From Macrostomum lignano (Eukaryota), in NCBI GenBank assembly GCA_002269645.1, contig NIVC01003265.1, positions 44,258 through 108,257 of the forward strand: a DNA stretch of 64,000 nt, read 5' to 3'. Made by a program: the position numbers and the translations under genes. The first letter of the stretch is position 1; the number at the start of each line of letters is the position of its first letter. Of the stretch, positions 6,351-60,920 are shown piece by piece. The notes under the pieces were generated by a model. It was not told where the DNA came from, made no database searches, and saw nothing but the letters and a program-made list of their open reading frames with translations.

Positions 6351-6844
6351 TCACCCAGAGTATCTCCTACTTTGCCATGCATATGTTGCAACAAGTCTGC
6401 TTGCAGTCGTGTCTGATGTTTCCAATTAGCAAAAGTATCCAGCTGCTGACTCAGTGAAATCTGGCACATCCTGCTTTCAGCTATCAATATCCCCCCCCGC
6501 ATCTTCGATACTCCTGCCTCATCCTGAGCACCCCGTGCTCTCCAATCTCGCTAATGAGTTTGTCTCACCTGCCACGTGTGAAATGAGAGAAATTGACTTT
6601 TCCAAGAATCGCTACTGCTGCGGGGCCGGGGAATGAGTGGGGAGCAGAGGGGTAGGGAGGCGGCAGGGGGGGGGGTGCTTTGCCGGGGTTTGTTTGCTTT
6701 GTGTGCAAATTAATTTTAGCAGTGGGAAAGTCAAATTAGAGCGAATGTTGAGACAGGTTGGCGAGCCGAACCGGCACCAGCTCGGAGCCGCTTATCGCCC
6801 TTGGATTGTGGCGATTTTTACTGATGAAGTGCTCAGAATGCTGA

Positions 6845-8345
6845 GATTTTGATAGGAGATGGGGTGAGATTTTGATAGGAGATGGGGTGAGATTTTGATA
6901 GGAGATGGGTGAGATTTTGATAGGAGATGGGGTGAGATTTTGATAGGAAATGGGTGAGATTTTGATAGGAGATGGGGTGAGATTTTGATAGGAAATGGGG
7001 TGAGATTTGATAGGAGATGGGGTGAGATTTAATAGGAGATGGGGTGAGATTTGATAGGTGATGGGGTTAGATTTTGATTGGAGATGGGGTTAGATTTTGA
7101 TAGAAGATGGGGTGAGATTTTGATAGGAGATGGGGTGAGATTTTGATAGGAGATGGGTGAGATTTTGATAGGAGATGGGGTGAGATTTGATAGGAGATGG
7201 GTGAGATTTTGATAGGAGATGGGGTGAGATTTGATAGGAGATGGGTGAGATTTTGATAGGAGATGGGGTGAGATTTTGATAGGAGATGGGTGAGATTTTG
7301 ATAGGAGATGGGGTGAGATTTTGATAGGAAATGGGGTGAGATTTGATAGGAGATGGGGTGAGATTTAATAGGAGATGGGGTGAGATTTGATAGGTGATGG
7401 GGTTAGATTTTGATTGGAGATGGGGTTAGATTTTGATAGAAGATGGGGTGAGATTTTGATAGGAGATGGGGTGAGATTTTGATTGGAGATGGGGTTAGAT
7501 TTGATAGGTGATGGGGTTAGATTTTGATTGGAGATGGGGTGAGATTTTGATAGGAGATGGGGTAAGATTTTTAGAGGAAATGGGGCGAGACATTGATAGG
7601 AGATGGGGTGATATCTTGATACTCGTAGATTATGGGATGAGATTTTGATAGAAGTCAGTGTGAGATTTGATAAGATATGGGGTACGATGTTGAAAGGAGA
7701 TAGGGTGAGATTTTTAGAGCAGATGGGGTGAGATTTGATAGGAGATGAGGTGAGATTTGATAGGTGATGGGGTTAGATTTTGATTGGAGATGGGGTTAGA
7801 TTTTGATAGAAGATGGGGTGAGATTTTGATAGGAGATGGGGTTAGATTTTGATTGGAGATGGGGTTAGATTTTGATAGAAGATGGGGTGAGATTTGATAG
7901 GTGATGGGTGAGATTTTGATAGGAGATGGGTGAGATTTTGATAGCAGATGGGGTGAGATGTTGAAAGGAGATAGGGTGAGATTCGATAGGAGATGGGGTG
8001 TGATTTGATAGGTGATGGGTTAGATTTTGATAGGAGATGGGGTGAGATTTGATAGGTGATGGGTGAGATTTTGATAGGAGATGGGGTGAGATGTTGAAAG
8101 GAGATAGGGTGAGATTTGATAGGAGATGGGGTGAGATTTGATAGGAGATGGGGTGAGATTTCGATAGGAGATGGGGTGAGATTTCGATAGGAGATGGGGT
8201 GAGATTTCGATAGGAGATGGGGTGAGATTTCGATAGGAGATGGGGTGAGATTTCGATAGGAGATGGGGTGAGATTTCGATAGGAGATGGGGTGAGATTTG
8301 ATAGGAGATGGCTGAGATTTTGATAGGAGATGGGGTGGGATTTTG
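6845..8345. repeat. 21-23-nt purine-rich minisatellite GAGATTTTGATAGGAGATGGGGT
   Basis: Direct reading; 6845-7150 and 7200-7500 look like a higher-order duplication. Confidence 0.95.
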
Positions 8346-9404
8346 AAATAATACAACCAATGAGAAAAAAAAGATTTTGAATAAAGATGGGGGAGATTCG
8401 TGAGGTGTTTGCTGATCGCATTGAGCATGCTGTCACTAAAAGCAGCTTGGCAGAGCCTGGCTCTCACAACTGGAAATCCAGGCGCTCACAGCGGTGATAA
8501 AAAACCCCTGCACTCCCCGAGCTCCGCGGCAGCTGGACCACCAGAGCACAGCGGGTCTGGGCAGGAGAGAGAATTAAACTGCTCGGGAGACGGCCGACTC
8601 ACAGGCCATCGCTTTATTGTGATGAGGCTGCATGGCCCCAGTGGGATCTGATCCCGCTGACCCCAGCCTCCCGCTGTCCCGTCTCTCTATCCTGTGCTCA
8701 AGTACCTCCGGCAATTAGCTGGCAAAATACGGGGAGCCTCCGATTAATGAACGGGCAGGTCCGGTGGCGGGGCAGAGAGGCACTGATGAAGCTGGCACGG
8801 CCTCCCAGCCTCCCACGCGCGGCTCAACCACTGGGCCAGGTGAGAGGGAGAATGCAGTATTGAAGGGATGGCACGGATGATGAATTGCCTCTCCCCCTGA
8901 CAACAAGCAGACAGCTGCAGCTCGAGCAGAGCCGGTCGCCAGCAAGAGTGCATCTGGGTGGGGCCGCATCAATCTGCGCTAATCCCCCCAGGCTAATTAA
9001 ATAATAATCCGTCACTGCGGATGCCATGGGATCCGCGCCAACCCCGCTGCTCGGTCCGGATGCCTCTCAATTATTGATGAAGCTGCCGTGCCGCAGCCTC
9101 CAGCGCATCCGCCAAACCCCCTCAGAGATGCCCTGTCCAGCCCTGGCACTTGTCACCTTGGAGCTGTCTGCCCCCCCCCCCTGCCCCAGCCTGTCTTCAC
9201 CTTCCGTGTTTGCCTGCCGAATCGATCGCTTTGCTGCCTCTGGAAATTCAGGCCAGAAATACTGCAATTTGGCTATTTGTGCGCCTTTGACACTTCCTGT
9301 GCGGACAGCCTGCGCCCGCGTGTGCCTGCGGTATTCACTTAAACTCTTGCCGATCTCCTGTCTGACACTCAGACTGGACTGAACTTCTCTGAGGTACAGT
9401 GGCT

Positions 9405-9505
9405 TGACTGACTGACTGACTGACTGACTGACTGACTGACTGACTGACTGACTGACTGACTGACTGACTGACTGACTGACTGACTGACTGACTGACTGAC
9501 TGACT
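9405..9505. repeat. (GACT)n microsatellite
   Basis: Direct reading. Confidence 0.95.
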
Positions 9506-9560
9506 CCCCAATCCCACTGCAGCCAGGGCCACAGGCGATGCCAGTCACTGCAGGGGAGTC

Positions 9561-31168
<21,608 letters not shown>

Positions 31169-32044: not shown

Positions 32045-35000
32045 TCAGCTCTGCTTTGCAGCCTTTTCACTCGGGCTTAGCTCCGCCGCAATCTCCTTCC
32101 AGACGGGGTCCAAACGTCGTTTGGTCGGCTTTGGCTTCGGCTTGCTGGGGTCCGCATTTTTGCGCTCCTTCGCTGGCTGCTCATTCGAGGCTGACAGACA
32201 GTGCCAGACCGCCAGCAGGGGGACGGGCAACACCGTCAGCCCTCTGATCAGCTCAATCAGCCACCACTCTGCCAGCGACCTGTGCAGCTGACTCTCGCTG
32301 AGGTTCTGCAGCGGCCCGGTCATCACGGGGCTGAGCGGGTTTCCAGTCCAGGATGGTAAAGCGAACTTCACCGAGTCCGTGACCAAGACCACCAAGCTCA
32401 GCAGCAGCAGCAGCGGAGTGTAGAAAAACCAGCAGAGCCGCCACCAGAAAGCCAGGCGGGAGAGCCGCTCGTTAACTGCAAAATATTCCAATCAGTGATG
32501 GCGCGTCAAGAACTGAACCAGCTTCTCCAGAAGCTTCTCCAGAACGGAGAAGACCACAGTGCCAATTATACTCCCGCTCTGTTGCATCTTTCGCCTAATG
32601 ATGCAAGCTCAGCCTCGAGAGAGTCAGTCTTGCATCTAACTAATGATGCAAGCTCAGTCTCGAGAGAGTCAGTCTTGTATCTAACTAATGATGCAAGCTC
32701 AGTCTCGAGAGAGTCAGTCTTGTATCTAATGATGCAAGCTCAGTCTCGAGAGAGTCAGTCTTGTATCTAATGATGCAAGCTCAGCCTCGACAGAGTCAGT
32801 CTTGTATCTAACTAATGATGCAAGCTCAGTCTCGAGAGAGTCAGTCTTGCATCTAACTAATGATGCAAGCTCAGTCTCGAGAGAGTCAGTCTTGTATCTA
32901 ACTAATGATGCAAGCTCAGTCTCGAGAGAGTCAGTCTTGTATCTAAATAATGATGCAAGCTCAGCCTCGAGAGAGTCTCTCTCGAGAGTCTTGTATCTAA
33001 TGATGCAAGCTCAGTCTCGAGAGAGTCAGTCTTGTATCTAATGATTCAAGCTCAGTCTCGAGAGAGTCAGTCTTGTATCTAATGATTCAAGCTCAGTCCC
33101 GAGAGTCAGTCTTGTATCTAACTAATGATGCAAGCTCAGTCTCGAGAGAGTCAGTCTTGTATCTAACTAATGATGCAAGCTCAGTCTCGAGAGAGTCAGT
33201 CTTGTATCTAACTAATGATGCAAGCTCAGTCTCGAGAGAGTCAGTCTTGTATCTAATGATGCAAGCTCAGCCTCGAGAGAGTCAGTCTTGTATCTAATGA
33301 TGCAAGCTCAGTCTCGAGAGAGTCAGTCTTGTATCTAATGATTCAAGCTCAGTCTCGAGAGTCAGTCTTGTATCTAACTAATGATGCAAGCTCAGTCTCG
33401 AGAGAGTCAGTCTTGTATCTATCTAATGATGCAAGCTCAGCCTCGAGAGAGTCAGTCTTGTATCTAATGATGCAAGCTCAGCCTCGAGAGAGTCAGTCTT
33501 GTATCTAATGATGCAAGCTCAGCCTCGAGAGAGTCAGTCTTGTATCTAATGATGCAAGCTCAGCCTCGAGAGAGTCAGTCTTGTATCTAACTAATGATGC
33601 AAGCTCAGCCTCGAGAGAGTCAGTCTTGTATCTAACTAATGATGCAAGCTCAGTCTCGAGAGAGTCAGTCTTGTATCTAATGATGCAAGCTCAGCCTCGA
33701 GAGAGTCAGTCTTGTATCTAATGATGCAAGCTCAGCCTCGAGAGAGTCAGTCTTGTATCTAACTAATGATGCAAGCTCAGTCTCGAGAGAGTCAGTCTTG
33801 TATCTAACTAATGATGCAAGCTCAGTCTCGAGAGAGTCAGTCTTGTATCTAACTAATGATGCAAGCTCAGTCTCGACAGAGTCAGTCTTGTATCTTACTA
33901 ATGATGCAAGCTCAGCCTCGAGAGAGTCAGTCTTGTATCTAATGATGCAAGCTCAGCCTCGAGAGAGTCAGTCTTGTATCTAACTAATGATGCAAGCTCA
34001 GTCTCGAGAGAGTCAGTCTTGTATCTAACTAATGATGCAAGCTCAGCCTCGAGAGAGTCAGTCTTGTATCTAACTAATGATGCAAGCTCAGTCTCGACAG
34101 AGTCAGTCTTGTATCTAATGATGCAAGCTCAGCCTCGAGAGAGTCAGTCTTGTATCTAATGATGCAAGCTCAGTCTCGAGAGAGTCAGTCTTGTATCTAA
34201 TGATGCAAGCTCAGCCTCGAGAGAGTCAGTCTTGTATCTAACTAATGATGCAAGCTCAGTCTCGAGAGAGTCAGTCTTGTATCTAACTAATGATGCAAGC
34301 TCAGTCTCGAGAGAGTCAGTCTTGTATCTAACTAATGATTCAAGCTCAGTCTCGAGAGAGTCAGTCTTGTATCTTACTAATGATGCAAGCTCAGCCTCGA
34401 GAGAGTCAGTCTTGTATCTAATGATGCAAGCTCAGTCTCGAGAGAGTCAGTCTTGTATCTAACTAATGATGCAAGCTCAGTCTCGAGAGAGTCAGTCTTG
34501 TATCTAACTAATGATGCAAGCTCAGTCTCGAGAGAGTCAGTCTTGTATCTAACTAATGATGCAAGCTCAGTCTCGAGAGAGTCAGTCTTGTATCTAACTA
34601 ATGATGCAAGCTCAGTCTCGAGAGAGTCAGTCTTGTATCTTACTAATGATGCAAGCTCAGTCTCGAGAGAGTCAGTCTTGTATCTAACTAATGATGCAAG
34701 CTCAGTCTCGAGAGAGTCAGTCTTGTATCTAACTAATGATGTTAGATGCAAGCTCAGTCTCGAGAGAGTCAGTCTTGTATCTAACTAATGATGCAAGCTC
34801 AGTCTCGAGAGAGTCAGTCTTGTATCTTACTAATGATGCAAGCTCAGTCTCGAGAGAGTCAGTCTTGTATCTAACTAATGATGTTAGATGCAAGCTCAGT
34901 CTCGAGAGAGTCAGTCTTGTATCTAACTAATGATGCAAGCTCAGTCTCGAGAGAGTCAGTCTTGTATCTAACTAATGATGTTAGATGCAAGCTCAGTCTC

Positions 35001-38000
35001 GAGAGAGTCAGTCTAGGACTGCAAGCTCAGTCCGCCACCAATCTAGAAAATGAATGAAAATCTCACGGCCCAGGTGCTTGAATAGAACTGTGGCCCCGGC
35101 CGGTCCAAGGAAGCTCCAGAGGGCCGCCAGCTGCATGGTGAGCAGCAGAGCGCAGTTCCAGCCCCAGGAGCTGTACAAGAAGGTGTAGATAGCGGCGCCG
35201 CCATACTGAAAGCAGAGCGGCAGGCACAGCGCAATCAGCAGGCAGAACAGCAGCAGGTGGAGGACTCCCGTCCAGTTCTTCAGCCTCGGCCAAACATCCA
35301 CCAGCGAGTCCACGCAGCAACAGAGGAAGGAGACGCAGTCGCAGACCTCGCCGACTGCGAAGCACAGCAGCGGGGCGACACTGAGTCCGGAGTTGATGGT
35401 GGACAGCACGTACGGCTGGATCTGCATGAGGATGTGCGAGTAGCCGAAGGCCTCCGGCTTCAACAGCATCGCCACGTCCGATTCCTTGCTGCTGACGCCA
35501 GCCTGAATGATCTCCTGGCAGAGGACGTGCAGCGAGTTGGCCAGGCAGTGCAGCGACAGGCTGACGAGGCTGGTGCCGATGAAGTTGTAGCCAAACGCGT
35601 TGGTCTTGGCCAGGTTGATGAGCTCCCCGGTGCTGCAGCCGGTGTTCCTGGGGAGTTTCGGGAGAGTTTTGGCGCCATCTGTGTGAGTTCTTGCCAGCAA
35701 AATCTATGGAGAGAGCAGAGACCGTTGCAGCTGCTCCAAGTCCTGGCTTGGCTAAGTTATTGGACAGCTCACCACATTACCAACTGAACAACTCACCACA
35801 TGACCAACTGAACAACTCACCACATGACCAATTTAACAACTCACCACATGACCAGCATTGTCGCGTCCACCCAAATGCTCAAATTGTTGGTCACACTGAG
35901 GCCTTTGCTGCTCGAGACGAACTCCATCAGGCCAACAAAGAAGCTGCTTCCATCGCCGTGGCAAACTGTGATGATGCAGACCACGCCGAGGGAAGCCGTG
36001 CTCGCGACGCTAAGGAAGTGCAACCAGCTGCTCAGAGTTTTCGGCTCCACCATCAGCGTGAGCAGCAGGCAGCAGTAGGTCAGGGTGAACACAAAGGTGA
36101 GCAGAGTCCAGTGTACCGGCTCCCCCATCGATGAGTCGACCCGGAAGCCGCGCCGCATTCTGCCAGTCAGCAGGTCGGTGGTGATCAGCTTCGGCCCGGC
36201 GAAATTCTCCGCAGCCTTTTCGGCGTCAACGATGCCGACCCGCTTCCACAGGTAGTGGTTTTTCAGCCCCTTCTCGCTGGAGTGCCGCTGCCGGTTCGCG
36301 TCGATCTCGCCGCAGATGCCCCAGTCGAGGTGAACTTCGTTCAGGCCGAGCTGCTGGCAGTCGCTGAGGTTGAGGTTCTTGTAAATTCGCTTCACAAAAA
36401 AGCCGCTCAGCAGAGGTGAGTTGCTGCTGTTGCTGCGCTCTCCCACGCTAAGCAGGCCGAGGCTCTCCAGCAGCACGATGGCCGTGTAGACACCCTCGCT
36501 GGCCACCACCATGTTGAGCGCCGTGTGCAGCACGCTGACCAGCAGGATGGACAGTCCGAGACCTGAATGGGATTGCCAGGCCATGATCAGATTCTAGTAG
36601 TTTCACTCTTCACCAGCTGGTGTTAACCGCTCTCTTGCGCAAGGATTTTGTCTGTAGGTTTCATAATTAATTAATTGATTACACCCGCCCTAATGGGCGG
36701 ATGTGCAACCGACAGCTCAGCCGCAGGTTTTGCGTGGCGCATGTGAAGGCTGCGTACGGCTGTTCAGTCCAAGGACTGGGGGGTCGCCACACGCACCCTC
36801 ATTTACCCCAGCTAATGCTGGCACCCATTTTAGAGCTGGGTGAACTGAAGCAATGCGGAGTTAAAGTTCCTAAGGAGGCTAAAACCCCTCACTAGGCTAC
36901 AACCCCTCACTAGGCTACAACCCCCTACAACTAGGCTACAACCCCTCACTAGGCTACAACCCCTCACTAGGCTACAACCCCCTACAACTAGGCTACAACC
37001 CCTCACTAGGCTACAACCCCTCACTAGGCTACAACCCCTCACTAGGCTACAACCCCCTACAACTAGGCTATAAACCTCTCACTAGGCTACAACCCCCTAC
37101 AACTAGGCTACAACCCCCTCACTAGGCTACAACCCCTCACTAGGCTACAACCCCTCACTAGGCTACAACCCCCTTTTCTAGGCTACAACCCCTCACTAGG
37201 CTACAACCCCCTACAACTAGGCTACAACCCCCTCACTAGGCTACAACCCCTCACTAGGCTACAACCCCTCACTAGGCTACAACCCCTCACTAGGCTACAA
37301 CCCCCTTTTCTAGGCTACAACCTCTCACTAGGCTACAACCCCCTACAACTAGGCTACAACCCCTCACTAGGCTACAACCCCCTTTTCTAGGCTACAACCC
37401 CTCACTAGGCTACAACCCCCTCACTAGGCTACAACCCCCTCACTAGGCTACAACCCCCTTTTCTAGGCTACAACCCCTCACTAGGCTACAACCCCCTTTT
37501 CTAGACTACAACCCCTCACTAGGCTACAACCCCCTTTTCTAGGCTACAACCCCTCACTAGGCTACAACCCCTCACTAGGCTACAACCCCCTTTTCTAGGC
37601 TACAACCCCTCACTAGGCTACAACCCCTCACTAGGCTACAACCCCCTTTTCTAGGCTACTTTTTTGCCAAACCCAACTGCAGGTAGCTTTGTTTAAGCTT
37701 TGTTTAAGCTACATGCAGTTGGGTTGAAGCTACAAAAAACGAAGCTTATTAAATTCTAAATCAGCACCATGGAAAACCCCTGTACAGACGAAATTATGAT
37801 CCTATCAAAACTGCAGCTAATTTATCTACCTAAAGTTTCAAAAAAGTCCAGGATTTCGTCTGTGGATAAAATGAACACGTTCGAAGCCTGGTGCTGGACC
37901 TTCACATTTCACACACTTCATAATCTCAGTCAGCTACCTGCTGAGACCTACTGCTAACTAAGAGTAGACCTGAGAGTCTCGCTACTCGTCACCAAGCACC

Positions 38001-41712: not shown

Positions 41713-56822
<15,110 letters not shown>

Positions 56823-57181
56823 AATTTGTTCTGCTCTACGAATACACTGCTGACACCGACACTTGTCCAATGTACAGCCGCTTCTGTCACTCGCTGCCAC
56901 TAGATATCTTCGACCTTCATTGTATTCTTCAGAATGCGACAATTTTTAGATTCCCCCAATGGCGTAAATGCAGTGACGTCATGCTTTACTTCTGCAAATT
57001 ATCATAAACTTTAATTGGCTTGAAGTTGCAGTCTAAGTGACTCTACAGTATCGGTTGTCTGCTCGAGTAGCTCATACTACTCAAAGTATTCAATGAGATG
57101 CATCAGACTGTTTCTATTGAGTTCAATTCGCTATTTGCTGTCTCTGGGGTTATTTTAATTTAAATAAGCTAGATGGAGCCT

Positions 57182-57535
57182 GGTCAGAGTGACGTCTTGG
57201 TCAGAGTAGAGTGACGTCTTGGTCAGAGTAGAGTGACGTCTTGGTCAGAGTAGAGTGACATCTTGGTCAGAGTAGAGTGACATCTTGGTCAGAGTAGAGT
57301 GACGTCTTGGTCAGAGTAGAGTGACGTCTTGGTCAGAGTAGAGTGACATCTTGGTCAGAGTAGAGTGACATCTTGGTCAGGGTAGAGTGACATCTTGGTC
57401 AGAGTAGAGTGACGTCTTGGTTAGAGTAGAGTGACGTCTTGGTCAGAGTAGAGTGACGTCTTGGTCAGAGTAGAGTGATATATTGGTCAGAGTAGAGTGA
57501 CATCTTGGTCAGAGTAGAGTGACATCTTGGTCAGA
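57182..57535. repeat. 22-nt minisatellite GGTCAGAGTAGAGTGAC(G/A)TCTT
   Basis: Direct reading; downstream of the ARHGEF17 stop. Confidence 0.95.
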
Positions 57536-57621: not shown

Positions 57622-57865
57622 GTTATATATTTAATTATTGAACCCCAGTCGAACCTCAGTATGGACAACAGGAGAGTATAAATATTCTATTATATAAATA
57701 TATCAAATATTGAAAGTGAGTCTACATTCAACAGAGTGCAGTTTGACAATGCGGGTACGGTCGCTTTCACAGTTACAACTGAGCACTTTTCGGACAGTAC
57801 AGTACGCTGTAGTTTTGGCTTTAGAAAGTACATCAGAGGTCAAGCACCTGGCTGGCCAAAGCTGG

Positions 57866-60800
57866 TCAGAGCACCCGTTGACCCCTCGGAGTTCCTTGAC
57901 CCCGGAAGACCGGATTTTCACGGCTGACGTTGAACTGCTGGTGGAACACGTTGCTGTTGTCGGGCCCCGGCGAGCCCCTGTAGCCCAGCTGCGGGTAGGC
58001 GCGGCCCTGGGTGGACAGCGAGGACCGCCGGGACCAGGCGGTGCTGTCCGCGTCTGCTTGGAGGTCGGCGGGCGGTACAGGAGACACTTAGTGCAGAACC
58101 ACAGCGGAACCTTGACGCTCCCAACTCCCCACACCGACAGACACCCATCAGTCCTTGGCGCTCTCTCAGTATCCCACACCGACAGACACCCATTGGCCCC
58201 TGGCGCTCTCTCAACATCTGAGACTGACAGACACCCATCAGTCCCTGGCACTCTCTCAGCATCTGAGACTGACAGACACCCATCAGTCCCTGGCACTCTC
58301 TCAGCATCTGAGACTGACAGACACCCATCAGTCCCTGGCACTCTCTCAGCATCTGAGACTGACAGACACCCATCAGTCCCTGGCACTCTCTCAGCATCTG
58401 AGACTGACAGACACCCATCAGTCCCTGGCACTCTCTCAGCATCTGAGACTGACAGACACCCCTCAGTCCCTGGCATTCTCTCAGCATCTGAGACTGACAG
58501 ACACCCATCAGTCCCTGGCATTCTCTCAGCATCTGAGACTGACAGACACCCATCAGTCCCTGGCATTCTCTCAGCATCTGAGACTGACAGACACCCATCA
58601 GTCCCTGGCATTCTCTCAGCATCTGAGACTGACAGACACCCATGAGTCCCTGGCACTCTCTCAGCATCTGAGACTGACAGACACCCATCAGTCCCTGGCA
58701 TTCTCTCAGCATCTGAGACTGACAGACACCCATCAGTCCTTGGCGCTTGTCAGCTCCACAATCGCATCAGAGTCCAATCGATCCTTCGCTCCCGCCAAAA
58801 ACACATGCATGCTTCTGAAAGTAGCTGAATCGGGCGTGCAACTCCAAAGTTGAAAAAAGCTCACCGAATTCGTCGGTCCAACCGTTCCGTCCCACCGACT
58901 GTCGGTAGCTCTGGTAACCAACCTCAGGCTGCTGTTGCGGCAGCTCTTCCAACGGAATCTGCCGCGTCACTGTCCACTCCTCAACGCGGAAAGGCGTGCT
59001 CATCCTGGTCTCCACGCCTTCATCCTCTTTGCGTTCCTGGAACTCGCGAAGATGATCGTAGCGGCCGATTCCGTCTCCTGGCAGCTGGCTGTTTGCCGCG
59101 GCGCTGTGGTACACCGTCCACTCCTCCACGTTCCGGTTTTCTGCTCCGCCACCGCCCACTGAGCGGCGTCGCTCCCTGCGGTCCTCGCTTCGGACGGTGC
59201 GCCTCTCGAAAGACCGCGCCCGCCTGGCTGCTGGCTGGCCACCCTCGGCTTCCGCCGAGTCCAGCAGCCGGCGGTAGCCCACGATCGAGTCCTGGCTGTC
59301 GATGATTTGTCCCGAAGCCGGCGACGACCGTCCCCTTCTCGTGGACGCAGCCACCGGAGTCTCGTACACGGTCGAGGCCTCGTAAGCCGGGATTCGCTCG
59401 TACACCGTCCACTCCTCCTTTGAGAAGATCTCCGGCGTTTTGGACTGACTGCGGCTGCTGACGGCTGCTTGCTGGCGCTGCTCTTCTTCTCGGGGACGTC
59501 GACGACTTTCCTCCGCCTCGCGACGTCGACGGCTTTCTTCTTCCTCGCGACGACGCCTGTTTTGCTCCTCTTCGCGACGCCTTCGTTCTTCGTCCCGTTC
59601 GCGACGTTGGTGACTTTCGCTCTCGTTGCTGTATCGGTAACTTGAGTTCTCTTCTCGTTTCTCGTTTCGCTTGTTCTCGTAGCCGTCTAAATAGCGTCGA
59701 TATCCAATAACGGAGTCGGTGCTGTCGTACTGATGCAGCTGCGAAGGTTGCGACGGTGGCGGCTGGAGATGCTGCACCGGGACCGTGTCGTACACAGTCC
59801 ACTCTTCGCGTCTGAAAATATCCGGAGTCTTGTTGGCGACTTCGCGGCGATGAAGCTCCTCTTGACGGCGCTCCTGCTCCGCCTCTTCCGCTCGACGTTG
59901 TCTCTCCCAATTCTCCGCCTCCCTGCGCCGCCTCTCCCGCTCCTCAGCTTCAGCCAGTCGCCTCCGCTCCGAGTCCTCCCTGCGCCGCCTCTCCCGCTCC
60001 TCAGCTTCAGCCAGTCGCCTCCGCTCTGAGTCCTCCCTGCGCCGCCTCTCCCGCTCCTCAGCTTCAGCCAGTCGCCTCCGCTCCGAGTCCTCCCTGCGCC
60101 GCCTCTCCCGCTCCTCAGCTTCAGCCAGTCGCCTCCGCTCCGAGTCCTCCCTGCGCCGCCTCTCCCTCTCCTCAGCTTCCCTCTGCCGCTGTCGGCGCTC
60201 CTCCTCCTCCGCCTCTTGCCGCCTTCGCGCCTCGGCCTGCTCAGCCTGCCGCTCCTGCAGCCGCCGGTCAAGCGTGTCGGTCACCGGCAAGGTCTCGTAA
60301 ACGGTCCACTGCTCCGTCTGCTGCGCGGGACGCAGATCGCCGCCCGAACTGGTTGGGCTGTCCCGTTCCAGAATTGTTCGTGAGGTGTACCGCGTCTTTT
60401 TCGTGACGAACCGCGGCGGCTGACGAAGGTCACGACTGCTGTTGTACTCCTGGCTGTCATCGCCTGGCCGCTGCTGGCCGGCCGCCAGGTTCGAGTCCGA
60501 GAGCAACATCTCCGCTTCATCGTCGGCGGAGGGAGTCTGGACGATCCGGATTCGCGCGGGCTTGCCGATCGGAGTGAAGCCGAGGTTCGTCGGCGTCCGC
60601 GGCGGCGACGGCGACCGTCGTTGCGGCTGCTTCGATGGCTGCGGCTTTGGCTGCGGTGGTGGAGACGGTGGCGGCGGAGGCGGCGGAGGCGGCGGCGGAG
60701 TTTGAGGCTTCGGCGACGGCGGCCTGAGCTGAGCCGGCTGCGCTGAGCGATTTGAGGGCGCACGCCGGACCGGCACCGCCACCCGCTTGAGCGACTCGTT

Positions 60801-60920
60801 GGAAGCGCTGCGCTGGGCGAACAGGCTGGCCAGGGAGCTCACGTGGCCCTTCTTGATGCCGGCCTCCGGCTCAACTTGGCTGCGCTGCTGCCGCTGCCTG
60901 GGCCGATTCGGGTTGCTCAT
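57866..60920 (-). CDS. Uncharacterised ~758-aa protein: Pro-rich N-terminus, five (E/Q)EWTV(Y/T) modules, R/E-rich helical repeats. Exons (minus): 60920-58865, 58086-57866
   Basis: 685-codon open exon with GC3-rich codons; acceptor TTCTCCAG just upstream of the ATG. Donor TTC G|GTGAGC (phase 1) matches acceptor CTAAG|TG. Stop 57866; AATAAA on the minus strand at 57616-57621. Confidence 0.8.
58130..58740. repeat. 45-nt minisatellite GACTGACAGACACCCATCAGTCCCTGGCACTCTCTCAGCATCTGA in the gene-4 intron
   Basis: Direct reading. Confidence 0.95.

What the first reader, a model, noticed from the sequence alone, without database searches (positions are those of the whole stretch)
58865..60920. Unrecognised modular protein with five EEWTV(Y) repeats separated by ER-rich helices
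Seen: EQWTVYETLP, REEWTVYDTVP, KEEWTVYERIP, VEEWTVYHS and VEEWTVTRQIP. Two sit in a longer duplicated module, TP(D/E)IF..EEWTVY...DS.DS(V/I)(I/V)GYRR.LD. Between them are R/E tracts typical of single alpha-helix (SAH) spacers, including four 19-aa AEAEERERRRREDSERRRL repeats. The N-terminus has GHVSSLASLFAQ and a poly-Pro tract. I cannot assign a family. Inference: a lineage-specific ruler or scaffold with repeated beta-strand docking motifs at defined spacing, possibly cytoskeletal (actin, muscle or ciliary rootlet).
Basis: partly seen in the sequence, partly recalled or inferred. Interest (0 to 1): 0.7.

Follow-up and report, generated by a model that had tools for sequence, protein, structure and literature searches.

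The report
Orphan flatworm protein, repeated EEWTVY motif
This is a real, transcribed two-exon gene of the flatworm Macrostomum lignano encoding a mostly disordered 747-residue protein with five EEWTV(Y) peptides, each followed by a helix (two are long arginine/glutamate rods); no relative was found outside this species and its function is untested, so it is a neat but fairly ordinary fast-evolving orphan.

Summary
Coordinates 58865-60920 (-) are exactly exon 1 of a two-exon gene (CDS 60920..58865 and 58053..57866, 747 aa) on Macrostomum lignano contig NIVC01003265.1 (GenBank BOX15_Mlig023050g2, "hypothetical protein").

- **Motif.** Five [E/Q]EWTV motifs hold 5 of the 7 Trp in exon 1. About 0.002 would be expected by chance. 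They use different synonymous codons.
- **Helices.** AlphaFold2 predicts disorder apart from helices that begin just after each motif, at a D-[S/T]-x-D box. Two R/E helices (about 151 and 87 aa) have single-alpha-helix composition.
- **Homology.** There is no Pfam hit. No relative outside M. lignano was found among 5.8 billion word-indexed or 1.84 billion HMMER-scanned proteins. UniProt's "CCDC66 domain" label was not reproduced.
- **Constraint and expression.** The gene is under constraint (dN/dS 0.14 against a homeologous copy) and is transcribed. A published primer table records in situ signal in "testes". Positional RNA-seq gave 0/1/2/29 reads, with none in the head sample.
- **Spacer length.** The helices differ in length between copies (-19 aa and +36 aa), through slippage of a coding minisatellite.

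The "lineage-specific scaffold with SAH-like spacers" reading is plausible. "Defined spacing" and "muscle or ciliary rootlet" are not supported. A nuclear mixed-charge-domain role remains a live rival.

The parts
57866..60920 (-). Whole coding span of the gene (BOX15_Mlig023050g2 locus): two exons, 747 aa
   Evidence: Locus L001 (NIVC01003265.1) is 100% identical to the window over 3601 nt.
58865..60920 (-). Exon 1 (aa 1-685 plus the first base of codon 686). This is the finding's interval.
   Evidence: ATG at 60920 with an in-frame TGA 66 nt upstream (read). GT donor at 58864/58863.
58054..58864 (-). Intron (811 nt, GT..AG), mostly a 45-bp tandem array (58136-58744, 13.5 copies)
   Evidence: The same array is expanded to about 3.3 kb in the homeologous locus L002.
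57866..58053 (-). Exon 2 (aa 686-747 and stop). Identical in L002.
60285..60314 (-). Motif copy 1, EQWTVYETLP (aa 203-212). The helix starts 2 residues later, at TDTLDRR.
59778..59807 (-). Motif copy 2, EEWTVYDTVP (aa 372-381), preceded by KTPDIF
59388..59417 (-). Motif copy 3, EEWTVYERIP (aa 502-511), preceded by KTPEIF. A partial echo STVYETP lies at aa 515-521 (59358-59378).
59097..59126 (-). Motif copy 4, EEWTVYHSAA (aa 599-608)
58953..58982 (-). Motif copy 5, EEWTVTRQIP (aa 647-656), preceded by STPF
59829..60281 (-). Helix 1 (aa 214-364, about 151 residues): R/E mixed-charge tract with SAH-type composition
   Evidence: AlphaFold2 H214-326 in P0001 numbering, pLDDT 85-94. Composition. Weak match to the myosin VI SAH region.
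59918..60179 (-). Coding minisatellite inside helix 1: 57 bp (19 aa, AEAEERERRRREDSERRRL), 4.6 copies, 98% identity
   Evidence: L002 has 3 full copies. The GenBank model P0001 of this locus shows only 2.
59460..59720 (-). Helix 2 (aa 401-487), from the cap box DSTDSVIGYRRYLD through the second R/E tract. It contains a 27-bp repeat at 59495-59552.
   Evidence: AlphaFold2 H363-449 in P0001 numbering.. L002 has 36 more residues here.
59160..59288 (-). Helices of module 3 (aa 545-558 and 563-587), starting at DSQDSIVGYRRLLD
60603..60725 (-). Proline-rich tract (aa 66-106), predicted disordered
60813..60848 (-). N-terminal GHVSSLASLFAQ (aa 25-36). Present, with no match to anything.
60290..60521 (-). 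Amplicon of the published ISH primer pair RNA815_51051 (expression annotated as 'testes')
   Evidence: Brand et al. 2020, PMC7336406, Table S11. Both primers match the window exactly and also match all three paralogous loci.

Best explanation
The gene encodes an intracellular, largely disordered, multivalent linker protein. So far it is known only from Macrostomum lignano, and it is expressed at low level, probably in the male reproductive system.

The protein is built from five degenerate copies of one module. Each module has an extended, beta-prone peptide ([TPxIF]-xx-E-E-W-T-V-Y), then a variable linker, then a helix that starts at a D-[S/T]-x-D capping box. In modules 1 and 2 the helix has grown into a long arginine/glutamate rod of the single-alpha-helix type. 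At 0.15 nm per residue these rods would be about 23 nm and 13 nm long.

The proposed mechanism is as follows. The Trp/Val/Tyr face of each EEWTV(Y) peptide docks onto a folded partner, by strand addition or insertion into a pocket. The rods hold the docking sites apart, so one molecule can bridge or cluster several partner copies. Rod length changes easily by minisatellite slippage, so the rods act as tolerant spacers and not as a calibrated ruler.

Shown here: the gene model, transcription, motif conservation, predicted helices and their composition, length variation between copies, and the failure of these searches to find any relative outside the species.

Inferred: docking, the existence of a partner, bridging, and the cell type.
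For: - **Gene and constraint.** Gene model and splice sites. Against the homeologous locus there are 9 nonsynonymous and 20 synonymous changes in 666 codons (dN/dS 0.14, binomial p = 5e-7). None falls in an EEWTV core or a cap box.
- **Motif.** It far exceeds chance and is conserved through synonymous codon changes.
- **Module architecture.** Internal alignment. AlphaFold2 places helices at aa 214-364, 401-487, 545-558 and 563-587 in window numbering, each beginning at the DTLD or DSxDS box, with everything else disordered. In the module run the motif is extended with pLDDT 83, and the helix starts at the DS box.
- **Rods.** 73-76% charged, 0-5% hydrophobic, 0.73-0.90 opposite-charge i/i+3,4 pairs per residue, no Gly or Pro in tract 1. 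The nearest PDB sequence is the myosin VI SAH segment, at a non-significant E = 0.087.
- **Cell location.** I see no hydrophobic N-terminal segment in the sequence. No signal-peptide predictor was run.
- **Expression.** The annotation is RNA-seq based. The ISH primer pair lies in this gene and is annotated 'testes'. Positional RNA-seq reads were 0/1/2/29 for head; head+testis; head+testis+ovary; whole worm.
Against: - No partner is known and nothing shows that the motif binds anything.
- In the full-length AlphaFold2 run the motifs have pLDDT below 50. Both runs had essentially no alignment depth.
- The expression data conflict and are thin. Only 29 reads put the transcript fragment in the tail region in 2015, the 2020 reanalysis calls the gene 'Non-Specific', and the ISH entry has no reference or image available to me.
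- Flanking and intronic DNA differs by only 1.5% between the two loci, against pS 4.1%. Measured against non-coding DNA the constraint is weaker: pN 0.6% against 1.5%.
- R-rich mixed-charge tracts are also typical of nuclear condensate proteins.
Confidence: 0.4

Rival explanations
1. Nuclear or RNA-granule protein. The arginine-rich mixed-charge tracts act as nuclear-import and condensate-targeting domains (nuclear speckle or nucleolus), as in SNRNP70 or NELFE. The EEWTV(Y) motifs recruit a client. The helices are then incidental.
For: - The protein is 18.6% Arg and 14.1% Glu, with net charge +18.
- The tracts are R-enriched (Arg, almost no Lys), near neutral and moderately blocky (RRRR/EEEE).
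- PMC9324279 reports that R-rich mixed-charge domains enter the nucleus even at zero net charge, and partition to speckles or nucleoli according to charge patterning.
- SP/TP-rich and RG-containing flanks can be read.
Against: - The characterised R-MCDs are disordered alternating RD/RE/RS dipeptide tracts. Here AlphaFold2 predicts one uninterrupted helix at pLDDT about 90, with i/i+4 charge pairing.
- No RRM, G-patch or other RNA-processing domain was found.
- There are no localisation data.
Confidence: 0.25
2. One reading: a calibrated molecular ruler of the actin, muscle or ciliary-rootlet cytoskeleton, with docking motifs held at defined spacing.
For: SAH-type tracts and repeated motifs.
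Against: - Spacer lengths differ between two constrained copies in the same genome (-19 aa in tract 1, +36 aa in tract 2).
- The repeats are a young minisatellite (98% identity).
- The head sample, with muscle and ciliated epidermis, gave 0 reads, and the ISH annotation is testes.
- No CH, LIM, Xin, nebulin or other cytoskeletal domain was found.
Confidence: 0.05
3. Coiled-coil protein. The R/E helices pair into dimers or filaments (trichohyalin- or CCDC-like), and the protein is a structural polymer.
For: - Long predicted helices.
- UniProt names two older gene models of this cluster 'CCDC66 domain-containing protein'.
- A weak compositional match to the colicin E1 helical region.
Against: - Only 5% hydrophobic residues and no heptad seam; the only regular hydrophobic residue is one Leu per 19 aa.
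- The current Pfam gives no CCDC66 hit, or any other hit, at E <= 10 for four cluster members.
Confidence: 0.1
4. Young repeat-driven ORF with little or no function. It would be transcribed at low level, with its shape dictated by minisatellite expansion in a repeat-rich genome.
For: - No homologues were found.
- Read counts are very low.
- The window is full of tandem arrays.
- One of the three loci carries a frameshift.
Against: - dN/dS is 0.14 with p = 5e-7.
- The motif is conserved through synonymous change across five old, otherwise diverged copies.
- A 2.2-kb frame stays open in GC-rich sequence in two diverged loci.
Confidence: 0.1

Closest known systems
Single alpha-helix (ER/K, CSAH) domains, e.g. 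the myosin VI medial tail, myosin X, caldesmon's central helix and INCENP
   Same: Long uninterrupted helix predicted, about 75% charged residues, dense i/i+3,4 opposite-charge pairs and no hydrophobic seam. The myosin VI SAH segment is the top PDB sequence match to tract 1, but not significantly (E = 0.087). Like caldesmon or INCENP, the rod would separate binding regions; this comparison is from my own knowledge.
   Different: The basic residues are almost all Arg rather than mixed Lys/Arg. There is no motor, kinase-binding or actin-binding domain attached. Length varies between gene copies. Monomeric helicity is untested. The similarity is compositional and does not indicate homology.
Arginine-enriched mixed-charge domains of nuclear speckle proteins (SNRNP70, NELFE)
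   Same: R-rich, near-neutral mixed-charge low-complexity tracts more than 50 residues long (properties of the class from PMC9324279).
   Different: Those tracts are alternating RD/RE/RS and disordered. This one is blocky (RRRR, EEEE), Glu-based and predicted helical. No RNA-binding domain was found.
CCDC66 (Pfam PF15236), the label UniProt gives to cluster members P0004 and P0005
   Same: Both contain a Glu/Arg-rich helical region (property of CCDC66 from my own knowledge; the label is).
   Different: There is no Pfam match at E <= 10 for P0001, P0002, P0004, P0005 or the window protein. No CCDC66 relative appeared in any homology search. The label most likely came from a composition-driven hit in an older release.
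Arrays of short peptide motifs, e.g. Xin repeats (GDV..RWLFET.PLD), LIR/AIM motifs and kinesin W-acidic motifs
   Same: A short Trp-centred peptide flanked by acidic residues, repeated several times in a disordered chain. YETLP loosely resembles the FETQP of Xin repeats; this is recalled from memory and is a lead only.
   Different: There is no hit to the Pfam Xin model. The register differs by one residue from Xin. The residue at +3 from Trp is Tyr or Thr, not the Leu/Ile/Val an LIR needs. Trp is followed by Thr and not by the acidic residue of W-acidic motifs (read).

Membership tests
Single alpha-helix (SAH / ER-K) domain | A segment of at least about 40 residues that is mostly Glu plus Arg/Lys | tested here: met
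   Tract 1 core (aa 219-358) is 73% charged. Tract 2 core (aa 432-483) is 75% charged.
Single alpha-helix (SAH / ER-K) domain | Dense opposite-charge pairs at i/i+3 and i/i+4 | tested here: met
   0.76-0.90 pairs per residue in the two tract cores (0.73 over helix 1 as a whole), against 0.18 for the GCN4 zipper and 1.6 for ideal (E4K4)n. This is my own simple count and not a published SAH predictor.
Single alpha-helix (SAH / ER-K) domain | No heptad hydrophobic seam; no helix breakers | tested here: met
   5% and 0% hydrophobic residues. Tract 1 has no Gly or Pro. Tract 2 has one Pro, at aa 476.
Single alpha-helix (SAH / ER-K) domain | A stable monomeric helix in solution | not testable with these tools
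   The only support is an AlphaFold2 continuous helix at pLDDT 85-94. Circular dichroism and ultracentrifugation are needed.
CCDC66 domain (PF15236) | Match to the family profile at or above its threshold | tested here: not met
   No Pfam family at E <= 1 or E <= 10 for the window protein, P0001, P0002, P0004 or P0005. HMMER's bias filter may hide weak compositional hits.
Xin actin-binding repeat (PF08043) | Match to the repeat profile; GDV..RWLFET.PLD register | tested here: not met
   No Pfam hit. The spacing from W to [FY]ET is one residue longer, and the GDV part is missing.
Arginine-enriched mixed-charge domain (nuclear speckle type) | A long R-enriched tract with near-balanced acidic residues | tested here: met
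   36-38% basic (Arg) and 34-37% acidic, net +1 to +4 per tract. Class definition from PMC9324279.
Arginine-enriched mixed-charge domain (nuclear speckle type) | Nuclear speckle or nucleolar localisation | not testable with these tools
   No localisation data exist for this protein.
Canonical coiled coil | Hydrophobic residues at the a/d positions of a heptad repeat | tested here: not met
   One Leu per 19 residues and otherwise Ala only. 5% hydrophobic against 29-33% in reference coiled coils.
LIR/AIM (Atg8-binding) motif | Core [W/F/Y]-x-x-[L/I/V] after acidic residues | tested here: not met
   The acidic residues are present, but the core is W-T-V-Y (four copies) or W-T-V-T.

The most novel reading that the evidence does not exclude
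EEWTV(Y) is a previously undescribed peptide docking motif. The protein would be a male-germline-specific cross-linker whose SAH rods set the geometry of a Macrostomum-specific sperm structure, such as cortical microtubules, bristles or shaft. Minisatellite-driven changes in rod length would then provide heritable variation in sperm morphology, a trait under strong sexual selection in this genus.
Probability: 0.1. Interest if true: 0.55.

Novelty: new variant of a known kind. Interest (0 to 1): 0.3.

Why it matters
If the mechanism holds, this is a compact natural example of peptide docking sites separated by stiff charged helices. The spacer length varies between gene copies in one genome, which would make the protein useful for asking how tolerant such linkers are to length change. 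Macrostomum lignano allows RNAi and transgenesis, so the function could be tested directly.

More soberly, it is one of many reproduction-associated genes in Macrostomum that evolve too fast to be traced (PMC7336406). It also shows that the database name "CCDC66 domain-containing protein" carried by older gene models of this cluster is not reproducible with the current Pfam.

Tried and rejected
- **Word-indexed homology searches (5.8 billion proteins).** The full exon 1 returned only three M. lignano proteins, with candidates saturated by R/E words. The query with proline and R/E tracts masked returned the same three at E <= 10. A profile of the five modules found 19 candidates and none scored. 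That run did not even return the self protein, so it counts only as weak negative evidence.
- **Exhaustive HMMER search.** aa 484-747 against 1.84 billion representatives returned self only.
- **Metagenome scan with back-translated motif patterns.** 117 pattern matches, none confirmed. The first attempt failed for lack of conserved columns.
- **Pfam.** Run on five versions of the protein, with no hits.
- **PDB sequences.** Only non-significant compositional matches. One odd E = 0.0017 match to 8cgn_B did not recur.
- **Structure search.** I did not run fold search. Both AlphaFold2 models are low confidence outside plain helices (pLDDT 53.6 and 60.4), so matches would be meaningless.
- **Literature.** Nothing for the gene ids, the motif string or RNA815_51051 in main texts. 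The single EEWTV hit is a thrombospondin peptide paper, which I judged from its title and abstract to be unrelated. Supplements of PMC5816591, PMC5730564, PMC12896417 and PMC6410801 gave nothing, and some of those files are truncated.
- **Motif classes considered and rejected by inspection.** Xin repeat, LIR, UHM-ligand motif, kinesin W-acidic motif, PP1 RVxF and SxIP.
Full report
**1. What is in the sequence**

The interval 58865-60920 lies on the minus strand inside a 717-codon ORF (58767..60920). The sequence shows a GT donor immediately after base 58865 and, 811 nt downstream, an AG acceptor at 58054. These join exon 1 to a 188-nt second exon that ends at the stop codon at 57866. The spliced product is 747 aa. 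Its C-terminus is identical to that of the GenBank proteins P0001 and P0002. The finding's coordinates are therefore exactly exon 1 of a two-exon eukaryotic gene. An in-frame TGA lies 66 nt upstream of the ATG at 60920 (read).

**2. Organism and locus**

The only database relatives are Macrostomum lignano proteins. Locus L001, from contig NIVC01003265.1 of assembly GCA_002269645.1, is 100% identical to the window across 3601 nt. By arithmetic, the window is positions 44258-108257 of that contig.

The GenBank product at this locus (P0001, BOX15_Mlig023050g2, 709 aa, "hypothetical protein") lacks two of the four 19-aa repeats that the genomic DNA encodes. This annotation was built from RNA-seq and from de novo transcripts mapped to the genome (PMC5730564). 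The missing 114 nt is therefore most simply a collapsed repeat in a transcript, mapped as a false intron.

**3. Checking the observation**

The five [E/Q]EWTV motifs are at aa 203, 372, 502, 599 and 647.
- They contain 5 of the 7 tryptophans in exon 1.
- The expected count of EWTV for this composition is 0.002.
- None of 20000 shuffles gave even two copies.
- The copies differ at synonymous sites (Thr ACC/ACT/ACG/ACG/ACA, Val GTT/GTG, Glu GAA/GAG). Outside the motif the modules are only 24-43% identical. The peptide has therefore been conserved through old duplications.

The 19-aa repeat is different in kind. It is a 57-bp tandem array of 4.6 copies at 98% identity, which makes it a young coding minisatellite. 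The window as a whole is crowded with minisatellites (39 TRF rows scoring at least 300, some overlapping rows describing the same array). This agrees with the 15% simple and tandem repeat content reported for this genome.

**4.

AlphaFold2 on P0001, run without an alignment (mean pLDDT 53.6), predicts disorder everywhere except four helices. In window numbering these are aa 214-364 (pLDDT 85-94), 401-487, 545-558 and 563-587.

Each helix begins at an acidic/hydroxyl box directly downstream of a motif:
- TDTLDRR, 2 residues after motif 1
- DSTDSVIGYRRYLD, after motif 2
- DSQDSIVGYRRLLD, after motif 3

A second run on module 3, using the five internal copies as its alignment, gave an extended EEWTVYERI stretch with pLDDT 83 and a helix starting at the DS box. 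The internal alignment also shows weakened versions of the second half after motif 4 (GIGRYDHL) and motif 5 (EVGYQSYR).

The protein is thus five degenerate copies of one module: an optional TPxIF, then EEWTV(Y), a linker, a capping box and a helix. The helix has been inflated by R/E repeats in modules 1 and 2. Two further echoes exist: STVYETP at aa 515-521, and GWTDEF at aa 680-685 at the exon junction.

**5. Nature of the R/E tracts**

The cores of the two tracts have these properties:

| Property | R/E tract cores | GCN4 zipper | Ideal (E4K4)n |
|---|---|---|---|
| Charged residues | 73-75% | 45% | 100% |
| Hydrophobic residues | 5% and 0% | 33% | 0% |
| Opposite-charge i/i+3,4 pairs per residue | 0.76-0.90 | 0.18 | 1.6 |
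| Net charge per tract | +1 to +4 | – | – |

Tract 1 has no Gly or Pro. The best PDB sequence match to tract 1 is the single-alpha-helix segment of myosin VI, but at a non-significant E = 0.087. These features meet the compositional criteria for a single alpha-helix and fail those for a coiled coil. Monomeric helicity cannot be tested here.

At 0.15 nm per residue (textbook helix rise) the helices would span about 23 nm and 13 nm.

**6. Is it a functional gene?**

Three loci exist.
- L003 (NIVC01000292.1) is identical to the window over exon 1 except for a 1-nt deletion in a C run at codon 476. This shifts the frame and explains the aberrant P0003. The same shifted peptide appears in P0004, a separate UniProt entry (A0A1I8IV03) with different gene-model boundaries, which I take to come from an earlier assembly. 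If so, the deletion may be real rather than an assembly error.
- L002 (NIVC01002442.1, P0002) is a diverged copy.

Across 666 aligned codons, L002 differs from the window by 20 synonymous and 9 nonsynonymous changes. That gives pS 0.041, pN 0.006 and a ratio of 0.14. Under neutrality, a split this skewed has p = 5e-7. No replacement touches an EEWTV core or a cap box.

There is a caveat. Flanking, intronic and 3' sequence differs by only 1.5% (14 of 908 positions). The synonymous rate may therefore be inflated by mutable CGN codons. Measured against non-coding DNA, the constraint is about 0.4. Either way the reading frame is being maintained.

**7. Spacer length is not fixed**

L002 genomic DNA encodes three rather than four full 19-aa units (-19 aa, about -2.9 nm). 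It also has 36 extra residues of EAEESRRR(H/R) units in tract 2 (about +5.4 nm). Both copies show the same purifying pattern. This argues against a calibrated ruler and for a spacer whose exact length is tolerated.

**8. Homology**

| Search | Result |
|---|---|
| Pfam, five versions of the protein | nothing, even at E <= 10 |
| Word-indexed search of 5.8 billion proteins, full exon 1 | the M. lignano copies only |
| Same database, low-complexity tracts masked | the same three proteins |
| Exhaustive HMMER scan of 1.84 billion representatives, aa 484-747 | self only |
| Module profile | nothing (also missed self, so weak evidence) |
| Metagenome motif scan | nothing confirmed |

UniProt names two older gene models in the same 90% cluster "CCDC66 domain-containing protein". 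That name could not be reproduced and probably reflects a compositional hit on the R/E tract.

The failure to find relatives has to be read with care. I do not know how well these libraries cover other free-living flatworms.

**9. Expression**

- The annotation is transcript-based.
- Brand et al. 2020 (PMC7336406) list an ISH primer pair in their Table S11. It was designed on the 399-nt transcript fragment RNA815_51051, carries the expression annotation "testes", and is mapped to Mlig023050.g1. No reference is given, and the acknowledgements mention previously unpublished primers.
- Both primers match the window exactly, at 60499-60521 and 60290-60311. They bracket aa 134-210, including motif 1. 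They match all three loci, so the probe reports on the whole small family.
- In the positional RNA-seq of Arbore et al. 2015 (PMC4490696) this fragment had 0, 1, 2 and 29 reads. The samples were head; head plus testis region; head plus testis and ovary regions; and whole worms. It was therefore classed as tail-region specific.
- The 2020 reanalysis calls the gene "Non-Specific".

The data are thin and partly contradictory. They do agree on low expression and on absence from the head sample, which contains muscle, nerve and ciliated epidermis. That speaks against a general muscle or ciliary-rootlet protein.

The tail region holds the seminal vesicles with stored sperm, as well as the prostate and stylet. 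A male-reproductive role would fit both data sets, but this is an inference. Reproduction-related genes in this genus are reported to diverge faster and to be harder to trace between species, which fits the lack of detectable relatives.

**10. Most likely mechanism**

I favour a multivalent linker (confidence about 0.4). Five extended peptides, rich in the strong beta-formers Trp, Thr, Val and Tyr and preceded by acidic residues, dock onto copies of a folded partner. The charged helices keep the sites apart, so the protein can bridge or cluster partners. Docking, partner and bridging are all inferred.

The rivals are:
- **Nuclear or RNA-granule role (0.25).** The tracts would act as arginine-rich mixed-charge domains that drive nuclear import and partitioning into speckles or nucleoli (properties of the class from PMC9324279). 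The predicted helicity and blocky Glu-based pattern differ from the characterised RD/RS tracts, but nothing excludes this reading.
- **Coiled-coil polymer (0.1).**
- **Barely functional young ORF (0.1).**

**11. Comparison with known systems and novelty**

In its likely mode of action the protein most resembles SAH-containing linkers such as caldesmon, INCENP or the myosin VI and X tails. That resemblance is compositional and architectural, with no sign of homology.

It fails the membership tests for CCDC66, Xin repeats, canonical coiled coils and LIR motifs. It meets the sequence criteria for an SAH and for an R-enriched mixed-charge domain. The defining physical property (monomeric helix) and cellular property (nuclear localisation) of those two classes remain untested.

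I rate it a new variant of a known kind: a new peptide motif arrayed on a familiar type of charged-helix spacer, in a lineage-restricted gene. Interest is modest (0.3).

Noticed in passing
window 59918-60179; P0001: The GenBank protein for this very locus (PAA52311.1, 709 aa) contains only 2 of the 4 genomic 19-aa repeats. This is probably a collapsed transcript mapped with a false 114-nt intron, so the deposited protein is 38 aa too short.
   Followed up: partly
L003 (NIVC01000292.1) about 7425; window codon 476 (about 59493-59495): A third locus is identical to the window over exon 1 except for a 1-nt deletion in a CCCC run. The deletion shifts the frame (P0003, 601 aa). The same shifted peptide is in P0004, a separate UniProt entry (A0A1I8IV03) that I take to come from an earlier assembly, so it may be a real, very recent pseudogenisation.
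   Followed up: partly
window 58136-58744; L002 about 8234-11600: The intronic 45-bp tandem array has 13.5 copies here but spans about 3.3 kb in the homeologous locus. Its translations produced several long spurious ORFs on both strands (57703-58853).
   Followed up: partly
window 1-64000: The window is extremely rich in minisatellites (39 TRF rows scoring at least 300, some overlapping). Examples are 45 bp x 55 at 32595-35014, 40 bp x 40 at 1361-2946 and 23 bp x 66 at 6842-8346. Most long ORFs in the window are translations of these arrays.
   Followed up: no
window about 51866-56822 (+), e.g. ORF 53333-53953: The convergent downstream neighbour is a RhoGEF plus WD40_2 beta-propeller gene (ARHGEF10/17-like, more than 1248 aa). 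Its 3' end lies about 1 kb from this gene's stop codon, with a 22-bp array (57186-57535) between them. The same neighbour follows the gene in L003, so the duplication covers both genes.
   Followed up: partly
P0004, P0005 (UniProt A0A1I8IV03, A0A1I8I4B6): Older gene models of this cluster are named 'CCDC66 domain-containing protein', but the current Pfam gives no hit at E <= 10. P0004 also fuses untranslated upstream sequence and part of ORF 56355-56942 onto the protein.
   Followed up: yes
window 60290-60521: The expression records conflict. The ISH annotation is 'testes', the 2015 positional RNA-seq class is tail region (0/1/2/29 reads), and the 2020 reanalysis says 'Non-Specific'. The genomic amplicon is 232 bp, while the table lists a probe length of 278.
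   Followed up: partly
window 58866-58883 and 59358-59378: There are two degenerate echoes of the motif: GWTDEF at the exon 1/2 junction (aa 680-685) and STVYETP, 4 residues after motif 3 (aa 515-521).
   Followed up: no
masked query aa 424-510 (C-terminal region): One PDB sequence hit (8cgn_B, deposited as 60S ribosomal protein L17-A, 338 aa) reached E = 0.0017 with the masked query. It did not appear with the unmasked exon 1 query. I treated it as spurious and did not inspect it.
   Followed up: no
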